Made by a program: the position numbers and the translations under genes
From: Salpingoeca rosetta
Taxonomy: Eukaryota > Protista > Choanoflagellata
Reading direction: 5' to 3'
Assembly: GCA_033442325.1 (NCBI GenBank)
Contig: JAWQFM010000003.1
Span: 1,029,651-1,093,650 of the forward strand
DNA length: 64,000 nt
Shown: positions 11,142-13,320 of the stretch, in pieces
How positions within the stretch are numbered: position 1 is the first letter of the stretch
How the letters are laid out: every line of letters begins with the position of its first letter
The notes under the pieces: generated by a model
The model's input: only the letters and a program-made list of their open reading frames with translations
Told to the model about the DNA's origin: nothing
Databases searched by the model: none

Positions 11142-13320
11142 TCATTTATGGCTTCTTGCCCCTTTGCCAAGGAAGCACTCCTTCTCCGTCATGAACCGCA
11201 CACCCACGTTGCGTGCAAACAGCTTATCATCTGCGCTGTGGTCGTGCTGTCTGCCAGCAGCATCGCCAACGTAGAACGACTGCTGGCGGCTGATGGGCAC
11301 CCCGCCATTGAACCGCGACTCGAGCGCCGCCCATATCGCCGTCGACGGCTTGCGGTACTCGTCCTTGCGCAGCATGCAAAACACCTGCTCGCGGTGTGTT
11401 TGGTGTGTGTGAGTTTGGTGTGTGTGTGTGTGTGTGTGTGTGTGTGTGTGTGTGTGTGTGTGTGTGTGTGTGTGTGTGTGTGTGTGTGTGTGTGTGTGTG
11501 TGTGTGTGTGTTTGGTGTGTGTGTGTGTGTTTGGTGTGTGTGTGTGTGTGTGTGTGTGTGTGTGCACCTGAGTTGGGATGTTGACGGCCTCCAAGAAGCC
11601 CTTGACGCGGCCAATCTTCTTCATCACCGCCTTGCGGATGGCGCCCTCGTTCTTGAAGCGCTCGATGCTCTTTGAAGACGCAGGGCATTCCAATGTAATG
11701 AGAGGCGACACTGCAACACCACAGCACGCGACCGGACTCAAGCAACCCGACACACGAAAGCACACACACACACACACACACACACACACACACACACACA
11801 CACACACACACACACACACACACACACACACACACACACACACACACACACACACACACACACACCTCGTTTGTGAAGATGACAATCTTGTAGCCATCGG
11901 CTGCGTACTGCTTGACAACCTCGGGCACGCTCTGAAAGCGCATGCGCCACGCATTTGGATCAAACCCACGCACAGACGTGGACGCAAGGCAGCCATCAAA
12001 GTCAAACGCGGCAATCTGTCAGAGGGATGGTGGTGGTGCAAGGGATGGTGGTGAGCGCTGTCAGGGATGCAACCAGGCACAAACACACACATATCACACA
12101 CATATCACACATCATACATAACATCCACACCCACATCACATTAAGCACGCATCCACATCCACGCATCCACGCACATCCATGCATTCCCCCCCCCCCCACA
12201 CACACACACACATACACACATCACATCGCATCACATCACCTTGTGGGATGGCTCCACGTCTCCAAAGTCGAAGCAGAGGACAGAGTCACGTAGGCAGTGC
12301 CATCCCTTCGGCACTGGAAGTGCAACAGCGCCCTTGAAGAGGCGGGTCGGGAGTGACGCAAAGGTTGAAGATGCCTGCTGCGCACCCTGCTGAGCCGCAG
12401 ATGCGCCCACGCCCAGTGCTGCTTTCTTGGGTGGATGCTCGTCCTCATCATCATCGCCATTGTCATCGTCATTGTTGCGGGTGACAGGGCCTTTAGTTGA
12501 GCGAGCAGAGCGGGTGTCCTTGGGTTGCTTCGTGGCCTTAGCCATGAGCACATCCTCAATGGACCTCTGGGTGGTGGCTGCGACGTTGCCCCGTTGTGGT
12601 GACGCCGCCGTGCGCTTGGCACTGGAGCTGCTCGGGGCTGCGACTGTGCTGTCTGTGTGTGTGGTGGTGTCCAGTGACTCTTCAGTGTGCTTGGTGTGCT
12701 TGGTGTGCTCGGCGCGCTGCGACTGGGTGTGTTGAGCTTGTGTGCTGTATTGGCGCTCTGGCAGCATGACGCCGCCACCTCCTCCTCTCAACACCACGCG
12801 GAAGCAGTATCTGTTGGGTAGCAAGCAGACAACGCTGTTGTGTTGAGCCTTGCACGGCACCATCTGCTTTGTCTCCACACCGTCCACGCTGCAGGGGTTC
12901 TTCCCCAGCTGTTGTGAATGTGAGTGTGAGTGAGAGTGTGAGTGAGTAAGTGAGAGTGTGAGTGAGTGAGTAAGTGAGAGTGTGAGTGTGAGTGAGCGAG
13001 TGGGCGGGTGTTTGTGGGTGTGTGTCGCACAAAGAGGGTGTGTTATGAAAGCGAGCGAGACCATGTTCAGTGTACACCTTCCTGCTACTTTGTCACCCCC
13101 CTCCCCCCTCCTTTGCCTCCCTCGTTGGGCTGACCTGCGTGACAGTGACGGTGCCATCCGTGTTGAGGACAATGTCCATGGCCTGGCGGCTGCAGCGCAC
13201 ATCCTCGACTTGCGTACGAACGCTGCGCCCAAGTGTCACCGGCGTTCCAGGCATCAACACCACCTCCGCACATCCCCTCCACGCATTGCTCGCAATCGCC
13301 CTCAACTTTCCAGCGGACAT
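11142..13320 (-). CDS. FHA domain + HAD-family polynucleotide 3'-phosphatase (PNKP/ZDP-like) lacking the 5'-kinase domain
   Basis: N-terminal LGRS.....D.RCSRQ...QLGKNP (PNKP/APTX-type FHA); IAAFDFDGCL, GYKIVIFTNE, YRKP, SFYVGDAAGR..DHS.DD..FA; stop at 11142-11144 directly after the phosphatase domain. Confidence 0.88.

What the first reader, a model, noticed from the sequence alone, without database searches (positions are those of the whole stretch)
11142..13320. Chimeric DNA 3'-phosphatase: animal-type FHA fused to a plant ZDP-like catalytic domain, no kinase
Seen: the catalytic domain reads IAAFDFDGCLASTSV...AW...GYKIVIFTNE/SIERFKN...KIGR..GF...V.IP.QVF and ends with no P-loop kinase. From memory, plant ZDP has DFDGCL, TNES.I.RWKN and KIGRL, whereas animal PNKP has DLDGTL and TNQ plus a kinase. 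ZDP uses PARP-type zinc fingers rather than FHA. Inference: an algal/plant-type phosphatase (horizontal transfer or an ancient paralogue) wired to the XRCC1/XRCC4 phospho-docking system through a PNKP/APTX-type FHA.
Basis: partly seen in the sequence, partly recalled or inferred. Interest (0 to 1): 0.72.

Follow-up and report, generated by a model that had tools for sequence, protein, structure and literature searches.

The report
Choanoflagellate FHA-linked ZDP-type DNA 3'-phosphatase
This expressed Salpingoeca rosetta gene joins a phosphopeptide-docking FHA domain to a kinase-less DNA 3'-phosphatase of the plant-ZDP type; the combination is conserved across choanoflagellates but has not been studied, and it shows that DNA-end-cleaning enzymes were wired to repair scaffolds in more than one way.

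Summary
Window 13320-11142 (minus strand) is a five-exon gene, Salpingoeca rosetta PTSG_02372 (449 aa, UniProt F2U205). It has an aprataxin/PNKP-type FHA (aa 16-103), a disordered linker, and a complete PNK3P HAD phosphatase (aa 263-443). The stop follows at once and there is no kinase. RNA reads and spliced contigs confirm that the FHA exon is spliced to the phosphatase exons.

In trees, the phosphatase falls in the ZDP-like clade, which is mostly kinase-less (split 100/99). It carries that clade's signature residues (AAFDFDGCLA, FTNES.IERFKN, KKIGRxxGF, no PNKP loop insert). An AU test rejects grouping it with holozoan PNKPs (p 1.6e-6).

The genome also has a separate FHA-less phosphatase+kinase PNKP (PTSG_12542), an aprataxin and an XRCC1.

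The "plant/algal transfer" reading is too narrow. The same FHA+ZDP-type architecture occurs in at least six other choanoflagellates. Plant ZDPs form their own separate clade. In other protists the ZDP-type module is fused to PBZ, WWE, WGR, zf-PARP, PIF1 or APE-like domains.

Most likely this is an old eukaryotic paralogue that gained an FHA before choanoflagellates diversified. FHA docking to phosphorylated XRCC1 is inferred, not shown.

It is annotated in databases but I found no paper on it: a new variant of a known kind, of moderate interest. The scan had noted this same stretch once before (s1-438867).

The parts
13135..13320 (-). Exon 1 (aa 1-62): start codon and the first two thirds of the FHA domain, with pThr-pocket residues R32, S44, R45
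   Evidence: Sequence; FHA_2 1.6e-6 on this exon alone; spliced to exon 2 in RNA reads and contigs
12909..13134 (-). Intron 1 (GT..AG, phase 0), between ...TVTVTQ and LGKNP...; same place and phase as the intron in the FHA of the S. rosetta aprataxin gene
   Evidence: Joint 13135/12908 skipping 226 nt in raw RNA reads (X21: 4 reads, X22: 1 read) and in contigs of X4 and X5; aprataxin exon border
12240..12908 (-). Exon 2 (aa 63-285): end of FHA (to about aa 103, N66), disordered low-complexity linker (aa 106-240), first strands of the phosphatase domain
   Evidence: AlphaFold2 pLDDT under 50 for most of 106-240 and over 90 on both sides
12016..12239 (-). Intron 2
   Evidence: Spliced contigs of X4 and X5 go from 12245 to 12017; the public protein record joins ...SHK|IAAF
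11866..12015 (-). Exon 3 (aa 286-335): HAD motif I AAFDFDGCLA (D290 nucleophile, D292) and motif II FTNE (T333)
   Evidence: PNK3P 1.2e-8; alignment columns
11670..11865 (-). Intron 3, mostly a (GT)n run
11568..11669 (-). Exon 4 (aa 336-369): ZDP-clade signature SIERFKN...KKIGRVKGF
11385..11567 (-). Intron 4, mostly a (CA)n run
   Evidence: junction as in P0059
11142..11384 (-). Exon 5 (aa 370-449 plus stop TGA at 11144-11142): motif III RKP (K381), motif IV GDAAGR (D410), end of the phosphatase domain; no kinase follows
   Evidence: PNK3P 6e-20; 42 bits to the mouse PNKP phosphatase domain; no AAA_33 on contig C3
11050..11141 (.). (TG)n run directly after the stop codon; transcript contigs end about 27 nt past the stop

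Best explanation
PTSG_02372 is an expressed, intact gene for a two-module DNA-end-processing enzyme. Its C-terminal domain is a HAD-type polynucleotide 3'-phosphatase of the ZDP-like lineage, which is mostly kinase-less. It should remove 3'-phosphates from nicks, gaps and breaks through the D290 aspartyl-phosphate mechanism; it cannot phosphorylate 5'-OH ends. Its N-terminal domain is an aprataxin-family FHA, held on a roughly 135-residue disordered tether. It most likely brings the enzyme to damage sites by binding CK2-type phospho-Ser/Thr acidic motifs on a scaffold, with XRCC1 the best candidate. 5'-kinase activity is supplied separately by the FHA-less PNKP, PTSG_12542. In evolutionary terms the phosphatase is an old eukaryotic paralogue of the PNKP phosphatase. 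Different lineages fused it to different break- or PAR-sensing modules: zf-PARP in plants; PBZ, WWE and WGR in protists. In the choanoflagellate lineage it gained an FHA before the sampled craspedids diverged, and probably before the split from acanthoecids. Shown: gene structure, expression, domain identities, clade placement, conservation of catalytic and pThr-binding residues, and presence of the paralogue set. Inferred: enzymatic activity, the FHA's ligand, and the timing and direction of the fusion.
For: Gene model and identity. Expression and splicing of the FHA exon to the phosphatase exons: including a 1421-nt spliced contig whose length fits exons 1-5 plus short UTRs. Phosphatase fold and catalytic residues. 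ZDP-like placement: SH-aLRT 100 in the 169-row tree; 100/99 in the careful 90-row tree, with a craspedid FHA-phosphatase clade at 98/91. An AU test rejects a clade with the holozoan/animal PNKP group (dlnL 127, p 1.6e-6). Ten clade-signature columns are shared and the PNKP loop insert after GDAAGR is absent. Orthologues with the same architecture: Choanoeca perplexa, C. flexa, Salpingoeca kvevrii, Monosiga brevicollis, one Logan contig of unknown organism (FHA_2 1.8e-9), and Helgoeca nana with a weak FHA_2 match. Other partner modules on the same phosphatase clade. FHA class and pocket residues R32/S44/R45/N66: read against PMC4655838. The rest of the toolkit is present: PNKP without FHA, aprataxin, and XRCC1 with XRCC1_N, BRCT matches and acidic S/T clusters.
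Against: No biochemical data exist. The weaker AU test, which moves the craspedid clade just across the central branch to the PNKP side, gave p 0.054 and is not formally rejected. Four of the 50 ZDP-like rows do carry a kinase, so 'kinase-less clade' is a tendency, not a rule. Helgoeca nana's protein does not group with the craspedid ones inside the clade and its FHA_2 score is just under Pfam's cut-off, so a single fusion event for all choanoflagellates is not proven. Most near neighbours are unnamed environmental proteins, so an ancient transfer from some protist cannot be excluded. XRCC4 was not detected (inconclusive). The XRCC1 acidic clusters were read from open frames, and their exon status was not verified. 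Junctions of exons 3-4 and 4-5 rest on the public record and on contig length, not on laid reads.
Confidence: 0.75

Rival explanations
1. It is a PNKP that lost its kinase, or whose kinase exon was missed by the gene model.
For: FHA plus phosphatase in the same order as animal PNKP. Several FHA+phosphatase records inside the animal PNKP clade look like truncated models (P0221, P0260, P0275).
Against: The phosphatase domain lies in the ZDP-like clade (100/99). An AU test rejects a clade with holozoan PNKPs (p 1.6e-6). The signature residues are ZDP-like and the PNKP loop insert is absent. Complete transcript-derived orthologues of 352-361 aa also end right after the phosphatase. There is an in-frame stop, a convergent tRNA-synthetase gene within about 450 bp, and no AAA_33 match on the contig.
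Confidence: 0.03
2. The phosphatase came by horizontal transfer from a plant or green alga, or more loosely from some other protist, and was then fused to a resident FHA.
For: Named best hits outside choanoflagellates are plant ZDPs at 45-52% identity. No named animal or fungal protein appears among the top 120 hits. The nearest non-choanoflagellate rows are marine environmental or MMETSP proteins.
Against: Plant and charophyte ZDPs form a separate clade (100/96) that does not contain, and is not sister to, the choanoflagellate clade. The gene is present in at least seven choanoflagellates, including an acanthoecid. It has four introns of the host's typical (CA)n-rich kind and the local base composition. 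A broad patchy distribution with lineage-specific partner domains fits vertical descent with losses equally well.
Confidence: 0.12
3. The FHA does not dock on phospho-XRCC1. It recruits the enzyme through poly(ADP-ribose), or through another phosphoprotein such as an XRCC4-like or MDC1-like factor.
For: Elsewhere the same phosphatase clade is fused to PAR- or PARP-related modules (zf-PARP, PBZ, WWE, WGR). A paper reports that a set of FHA and BRCT domains recognises PAR and that PAR mediates early recruitment of PNKP and APTX; I read only its abstract and section headings (PMC3759693). PNKP's basic Arg44 is Val41 here and Lys45 is Arg42, so specificity may differ.
Against: The canonical pThr pocket (R32, S44, R45, N66) is intact. 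An XRCC1 orthologue with CK2-like acidic S/T clusters is present. The two modes are not exclusive.
Confidence: 0.2

Closest known systems
Plant ZDP (zinc-finger DNA 3'-phosphatase, Arabidopsis AtZDP and relatives)
   Same: Same lineage of the PNK3P catalytic domain: same clade (100/99), 45-52% identity, and shared signature motifs AAFDFDGCLA, FTNES(N)IER(W/F)KN and K(I/V)GRL. No 5'-kinase. An N-terminal targeting module on a linker (PMC10573277).
   Different: ZDP targets breaks with PARP-type zinc fingers that sense nicks directly. This protein has none and carries an FHA phosphopeptide-binding domain instead. Plant ZDPs form their own clade apart from the choanoflagellate proteins.
Animal PNKP (bifunctional polynucleotide kinase/3'-phosphatase; mouse structures 1YJ5, 3ZVL, 3U7E)
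   Same: N-terminal aprataxin-family FHA with the same pThr-pocket residues, a flexible linker, then a PNK3P phosphatase of the same fold (38% identity, rmsd 2.4-2.8 A over about 192 columns).
   Different: No kinase domain. The phosphatase belongs to a different paralogue lineage (AU p 1.6e-6) and lacks the loop insert after GDAAGR. S. rosetta has its own separate PNKP, PTSG_12542, which lacks the FHA.
Aprataxin and APLF (the other FHA_2-bearing end-processing factors)
   Same: Same FHA class: 29.5 bits to the human aprataxin FHA, with fold TM-scores normalised to the target (TMt) of 0.77-0.87. The logic is the same: an FHA docking module tethered to a DNA-end enzyme or PAR reader. The S. rosetta aprataxin FHA has its intron at the same place and phase.
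   Different: The effector domain is a HAD phosphatase, not a HIT deadenylase (APTX) or PBZ fingers (APLF).
Protist ZDP-like phosphatases fused to PBZ, WWE, WGR, PIF1 or APE-like (Exo_endo_phos) domains; yeast Tpp1 as a stand-alone 3'-phosphatase
   Same: A 3'-phosphatase module without a kinase, combined with a DNA-damage-related partner. The PBZ, WWE, PIF1 and Exo_endo_phos fusions placed in the tree (P0072, P0179, P0210, P0212, P0251) sit in the same 28-row subclade as the choanoflagellate proteins.
   Different: Different partner domain. Those proteins are unnamed environmental or MMETSP sequences. The WGR fusion (P0005) and Tpp1 were not placed in my trees; the Tpp1 comparison is from general knowledge.

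Membership tests
PNK3P / HAD-superfamily polynucleotide 3'-phosphatase (PF08645) | Profile match above the curated cut-off over the whole domain | tested here: met
   PF08645 125.5 bits (cut-off 22), profile positions 1-161 of 161, residues 285-440; also exon by exon
PNK3P / HAD-superfamily polynucleotide 3'-phosphatase (PF08645) | HAD catalytic motifs: DxDG (nucleophile and acid/base Asp), motif II Thr/Ser, motif III Lys, motif IV GDxxGR Asp | tested here: met
   D290, D292, T333, K381, D410/G413/R414 lie in columns invariant or nearly invariant across 53-90 homologues
PNK3P / HAD-superfamily polynucleotide 3'-phosphatase (PF08645) | Fold of the PNKP phosphatase domain | tested here: met
   AlphaFold2 pLDDT 88-98 over residues 241-443; Foldseek top hits are the mouse PNKP catalytic fragment, E 1.6e-17, rmsd 2.4-2.8 A
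PNK3P / HAD-superfamily polynucleotide 3'-phosphatase (PF08645) | DNA 3'-phosphatase activity | not testable with these tools
   Needs an enzyme assay
ZDP-like lineage of PNK3P | Phosphatase domain falls in the clade that holds plant ZDPs, apart from PNKP-type domains | tested here: met
   Split 100/99 and SH-aLRT 100. AU rejects a clade with holozoan PNKPs, p 1.6e-6. A nearer alternative is only borderline, p 0.054.
ZDP-like lineage of PNK3P | Clade-signature residues (F291, C294, A296, E335, S336, R339, K353, R356, F360, E436; no loop insert after GDAAGR) | tested here: met
   P0059 has the ZDP-clade residue at these ten flagged columns; at the eleventh flagged column (357) it has V where the clade consensus is L.
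ZDP sensu stricto (zinc-finger DNA 3'-phosphatase) | N-terminal PARP-type zinc finger(s) (PF00645) | tested here: not met
   No PF00645 match; the N-terminus is an FHA. So it is ZDP-like in catalytic lineage but is not a ZDP.
PNKP (bifunctional kinase/phosphatase) | C-terminal P-loop 5'-kinase domain (AAA_33) | tested here: not met
   The protein ends 6-9 residues after the phosphatase domain. No AAA_33 match on contig C3. The kinase-bearing PNKP is a different gene on C12.
Aprataxin-family FHA (PF17913 FHA_2) | Profile match above cut-off and FHA fold | tested here: met
   FHA_2 46 bits (cut-off 23.1); pLDDT 94-97 over residues 21-100; TM-scores normalised to the target (TMt) of 0.73-0.87 to the PNKP, APTX and APLF FHA structures
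Aprataxin-family FHA (PF17913 FHA_2) | pThr-pocket residues (PNKP R35/S47/R48; APLF R27/S39/R40/N60) | tested here: met
   R32, S44, R45 align with them in the HMMER alignments. N66 sits in the GxNP motif. The residue roles are taken from PMC4655838.
Aprataxin-family FHA (PF17913 FHA_2) | Phospho-dependent binding to XRCC1/XRCC4 CK2 sites | not testable with these tools
   Circumstantial only: XRCC1 is present with acidic S/T clusters; XRCC4 was not detected (inconclusive)

The most novel reading that the evidence does not exclude
Choanoflagellates split the animal PNKP job between two genes: a scaffold-docked 3'-phosphatase (FHA+ZDP-type) and an undocked kinase/phosphatase. The FHA+ZDP-type gene would be the older holozoan arrangement. 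Its FHA exon, which shares an intron place with the aprataxin FHA, would be the kind of module later shuffled onto PNKP in the animal line, after which animals lost the ZDP-type gene. If so, the XRCC1-PNKP docking system of animals was assembled by exon shuffling from a pre-metazoan FHA-phosphatase.
Probability: 0.1. Interest if true: 0.65.

Novelty: new variant of a known kind. Interest (0 to 1): 0.45.

Why it matters
PNKP, aprataxin and APLF are the three known enzymes that use this special FHA to dock on the XRCC1 and XRCC4 scaffolds, and defects in the first two cause human neurodegeneration. The closest living relatives of animals have a further member of this FHA set, in which the docking domain sits on a different, plant-ZDP-type phosphatase, while their true PNKP has no FHA. 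This shows that the recruitment module and the catalytic module were combined independently more than once. It adds FHA to the list of break- or PAR-sensing partners of ZDP-type phosphatases. S. rosetta is genetically tractable, so it offers a natural test of what scaffold docking adds to 3'-end cleaning without the kinase.

Tried and rejected
As the tool suggested, I laid the part beside it (11866-13500).

2. I tried to use a long open frame upstream of the C12 PNKP first exon as a search reference. It contains stops, so I searched with the kinase-exon open frame instead.

3. An FHA-domain tree was built to ask whether this FHA is nearer to the PNKP or the aprataxin FHA. It is unresolved: 97 columns, long branches, no starred set holding the query. 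No APTX or APLF sequences from other species could be fetched as references.

4. The XRCC4 Pfam search of the genome found nothing, and nothing rang in the controls either, so it is uninformative.

5. The ESM Atlas feature search gave only generic PNK3P clusters.

6. Three literature searches found no paper on an FHA-ZDP fusion or on PTSG_02372 or MONBRDRAFT_6863; a fourth search failed on syntax.

7. I considered and rejected a truncated PNKP, a missed kinase exon and a recent plant transfer (see rivals).

8. The spliced model was never joined by me. Exons were searched one by one by reference, and whole-protein work used the database's own record P0059. For aprataxin and XRCC1 only single exons or open frames were used.
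Full report
**What is there**

The minus strand of window 13320-11142 carries a five-exon gene with canonical GT..AG introns. The exons are 13320-13135, 12908-12240, 12015-11866, 11669-11568 and 11384-11142, with the TGA stop at 11144-11142. Introns 3 and 4, and the sequence just after the stop, are long (GT)n/(CA)n runs.

I searched the exons one by one by reference. Exon 1 matches FHA_2 (PF17913, 1.6e-6). Exons 3 and 5 match PNK3P (PF08645, 1.2e-8 and 6e-20). Exon 5 matches the phosphatase domain of mouse PNKP structures.

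A word search with exon 5 returned Salpingoeca rosetta records. Their cluster holds PTSG_02372 (P0059, 449 aa, XP_004996862.1, UniProt F2U205 "PNK FHA domain-containing protein") and a 372-aa variant that starts at Met78. P0059 is letter for letter my five-exon model.

All whole-protein work used this public record.

On the whole protein Pfam gives FHA_2 at residues 19-77 (5e-12), PNK3P at residues 285-440 (2e-36), and no kinase family.

**Expression**

- The exon 1-exon 2 joint (13135 to 12908, GT..AG on the minus strand) is seen in raw RNA-seq reads of two runs and in assembled contigs of two more.
- First mates lie on the + strand, as expected for a minus-strand RNA in a standard stranded library.
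- A 1421-nt contig (depth 118) runs exon 1, exon 2, exon 3 and then 372 nt further. That equals exons 4 and 5 plus about 27 nt, and the contig stops at the (TG)n run.

So the FHA and the phosphatase are on one mature transcript that contains the in-frame stop. Junctions 3-4 and 4-5 rest on the public record and on this length, not on laid reads.

**No kinase**

- The protein ends 6-9 residues after the phosphatase domain.
- No AAA_33 match exists anywhere on contig C3.
- A Gln/Glu-tRNA synthetase gene converges on the + strand (domain match at window 9005-9178, last recognisable exon about 10403-10490).
- Transcript-derived orthologues also stop right after the phosphatase.

**The rest of the toolkit in the same genome**

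- A second PNK3P locus on C12 is PTSG_12542 (P0316, 418 aa). It has a phosphatase and an AAA_33 P-loop kinase, starts about 40 residues before the phosphatase, and has no FHA.
- The only other FHA_2 match in the genome, on C13, is followed by HIT-motif exons. This is aprataxin.
- XRCC1 is on C22, with XRCC1_N and two BRCT exon matches. Acidic Ser/Thr clusters such as SSDSDDTDDE lie in open frames between the BRCT matches. Their exon status was not verified.
- XRCC4 was not detected, but that search rang nowhere, so it is uninformative.

**Which phosphatase lineage**

A word search with the phosphatase region and an exhaustive HMMER search with the whole protein both put FHA_2+PNK3P proteins without a kinase first. 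Next come PNK3P-only and PBZ+PNK3P proteins from MMETSP and metagenomes. Then come more than 90 plant zf-PARP+PNK3P ZDPs at 45-52% identity. Kinase-bearing PNKPs score lower.

- In a quick ML tree of 169 phosphatase domains, P0059 sits in a 50-row clade with SH-aLRT 100.
- In a careful tree of 90 rows, the split between this ZDP-like clade and all PNKP-like domains has support 100/99.
- In that careful tree the craspedid FHA-phosphatase proteins form a clade (98/91), and the plant and charophyte ZDPs form a separate clade (100/96).
- PTSG_12542 sits with FHA-less PNKPs of a sponge, a mollusc and a crinoid.

An AU test rejects uniting the craspedid clade with the holozoan/animal PNKP group (dlnL 127, p 1.6e-6). 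The mildest alternative moves the clade just across the central branch. It costs 33 lnL units and is borderline (p 0.054).

Column statistics agree with the tree. P0059 has the ZDP-clade residue at ten flagged columns:

- F291, C294 and A296, in AAFDFDGCLA
- E335, S336 and R339, in FTNES.IERFKN
- K353, R356 and F360, in KKIGRVKGF
- E436

It also lacks the PNKP-type loop insert after GDAAGR.

The clade is not strictly kinase-less. Four of its 50 rows carry AAA_33, and two of those also carry aprataxin-like HIT and zf-C2HE domains.

**Who else has the fusion**

| Organism or source | Record | Length | FHA_2 evidence |
|---|---|---|---|
| Choanoeca perplexa | P0061 | 358 aa | precomputed Pfam FHA_2 |
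| C. flexa | P0062 | 361 aa | precomputed Pfam FHA_2 |
| Salpingoeca kvevrii | P0067 | 352 aa | 1.3e-6 |
| Monosiga brevicollis (MONBRDRAFT_6863, A9UUG9) | P0180 | 343 aa | 1e-6 |
| Logan contig, organism unknown | P0063 | 464 aa | 1.8e-9 |
| Craspedida sp. UC1 | P0185/P0426 | 485/486 aa | none detected; the N-terminus differs |
| Helgoeca nana (acanthoecid) | P0446 | 381 aa | FHA-like N-terminus, 22.0 bits against a cut-off of 23.1 |

The Helgoeca phosphatase sits in a neighbouring subclade, not with the craspedids. The fusion is therefore old within choanoflagellates. A single origin for craspedids plus acanthoecids is likely but not proven.

**Other partners of the same module**

Within the ZDP-like clade the phosphatase is also fused to:

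- PARP-type zinc fingers (plants and some algae-like sequences)
- PBZ (P0072, P0075, P0104)
- WWE (P0179)
- a PIF1 helicase (P0210)
- an APE-like Exo_endo_phos nuclease (P0212, P0251)
- an unassigned conserved N-terminal domain (P0064, P0188, P0195)

A WGR fusion (P0005) also exists, but it is a partial sequence that I did not place in the trees.

The recurring theme is a 3'-phosphatase tethered to something that finds breaks, poly(ADP-ribose) or repair scaffolds. The FHA is the choanoflagellate solution.

**Structure and residues**

An AlphaFold2 model built with a 53-sequence alignment gives two confident domains: residues 1-105, and residues 241-443 at pLDDT mostly 88-98. They are joined by a disordered linker at 106-240.

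Foldseek against the PDB finds two sets of hits:

- the mouse PNKP catalytic fragment for the phosphatase (38% identity, rmsd 2.4-2.8 A)
- the FHA domains of PNKP, aprataxin and APLF (TM-score normalised to the target, TMt, 0.73-0.87)

Catalytic D290, D292, T333, K381 and D410 are in invariant or nearly invariant columns.

The FHA keeps R32, S44 and R45 (aligned to PNKP R35, S47, R48) and N66 in the GxNP motif. Solved complexes show these residues holding the phosphothreonine and the peptide backbone (PMC4655838). PNKP's basic Arg44 is Val41 here, so fine specificity may differ.

**Origin of the FHA**

PDB sequence scores do not separate PNKP (30.1 bits) from aprataxin (29.5 bits). APLF is lower at 19.4 bits. 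An FHA tree is unresolved.

One observation is suggestive. The FHA-coding region of PTSG_02372 is split by a phase-0 intron between ...TVTVTQ and LGKNPCSV. The S. rosetta aprataxin FHA is split at the homologous place and phase, between ...TVTLKQ and LGPNACSV. This fits a shared exon ancestry of the two FHA modules, but one shared intron place is weak evidence.

The description (FHA of the PNKP/APTX type, ZDP-type catalytic domain, no kinase, canonical PNKP elsewhere) is right.

"Plant/algal-type by horizontal transfer" is not supported, for four reasons:

- Plants form their own clade.
- The choanoflagellate genes are lineage-wide.
- The gene has typical host introns and base composition.
- The ZDP-type module is widespread among protists.

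An old paralogue kept in choanoflagellates and not seen among named animal or fungal top hits is the better reading. Most neighbours are unnamed, however, so an ancient transfer cannot be excluded.

Docking on phospho-XRCC1 is a reasonable inference, not a result. PAR binding is a live alternative (PMC3759693; abstract and section headings only).

**Known or new**

[quoted passage not shown] The S. rosetta and M. brevicollis proteins are in databases with automatic names only. Three literature searches found no study of an FHA-ZDP fusion.

I rate it a new variant of a known kind: known modules in an undescribed, conserved combination. Interest is moderate, mainly for the evolution of the animal single-strand-break repair scaffold system.

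The scan had noted this same stretch once before (s1-438867).

Noticed in passing
window 12882-12980 (3' part of intron 1) and P0001: An annotated 372-aa 'variant' starts at Met78 and lacks the first two thirds of the FHA. Small RNA contigs (X5 record 6, X4 records 3-4) and low read depth cover the 3' part of intron 1. A minor transcript that begins in or retains intron 1 may therefore give an FHA-less phosphatase.
   Followed up: partly
G000:C12:466900-469800 (L008 about 5100-7800, minus strand): The canonical S. rosetta PNKP (PTSG_12542, 418 aa) has a phosphatase and a kinase but no FHA. Its phosphatase groups with FHA-less 'F21D5.5-like' PNKPs of a sponge, a mollusc and a crinoid, apart from most FHA-bearing animal PNKPs. 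Animals may hold two PNKP lineages. One intron holds an assembly gap (run of N).
   Followed up: partly
G000:C13:1005282-1009200 (L009 5283-9200, plus strand): Aprataxin gene (FHA then HIT-motif exons). Its FHA is split by a phase-0 intron at the same place as the FHA of PTSG_02372.
   Followed up: partly
G000:C22 (L012 4745-5158 and 5516-5929, minus strand): Inside the XRCC1 locus, two open-frame segments of 138 aa are identical and lie 771 bp apart. This is either a real tandem duplication of a Ser/Pro/Thr-rich exon region or an assembly duplication.
   Followed up: no
proteins P0179, P0210, P0212, P0251, P0072, P0075, P0104, P0005, P0276, P0263: Environmental and MMETSP protists fuse the ZDP-type phosphatase to WWE, PIF1 helicase, APE-like nuclease, PBZ or WGR domains. 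Two large proteins combine it with a kinase plus aprataxin-like HIT and zf-C2HE domains. This is a rich set of undescribed end-processing architectures.
   Followed up: partly
proteins P0064, P0065, P0066, P0188, P0195, P0202 (N-terminal about 110 aa): A conserved N-terminal domain with no Pfam match (starts MTTLTVS..., with GCGFYEV and LYVQSTS motifs) precedes the ZDP-type phosphatase in several MMETSP and metagenome proteins.
   Followed up: no
window 11050-11141, 11385-11567, 11761-11865 and many places in 9500-15500: Introns and flanks are filled with long (CA)n/(TG)n runs, which give the 'CVCVCV/THTHTH' pseudo-ORFs on all strands. One (TG)n run starts directly after the stop codon.
   Followed up: no
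window 13407-13321: An in-frame upstream ATG at 13407 would add 29 repeat-derived residues. The transcript contig reaches only about 43 nt upstream of the annotated ATG, and orthologues start just before the FHA, so the annotated start is preferred.
   Followed up: partly
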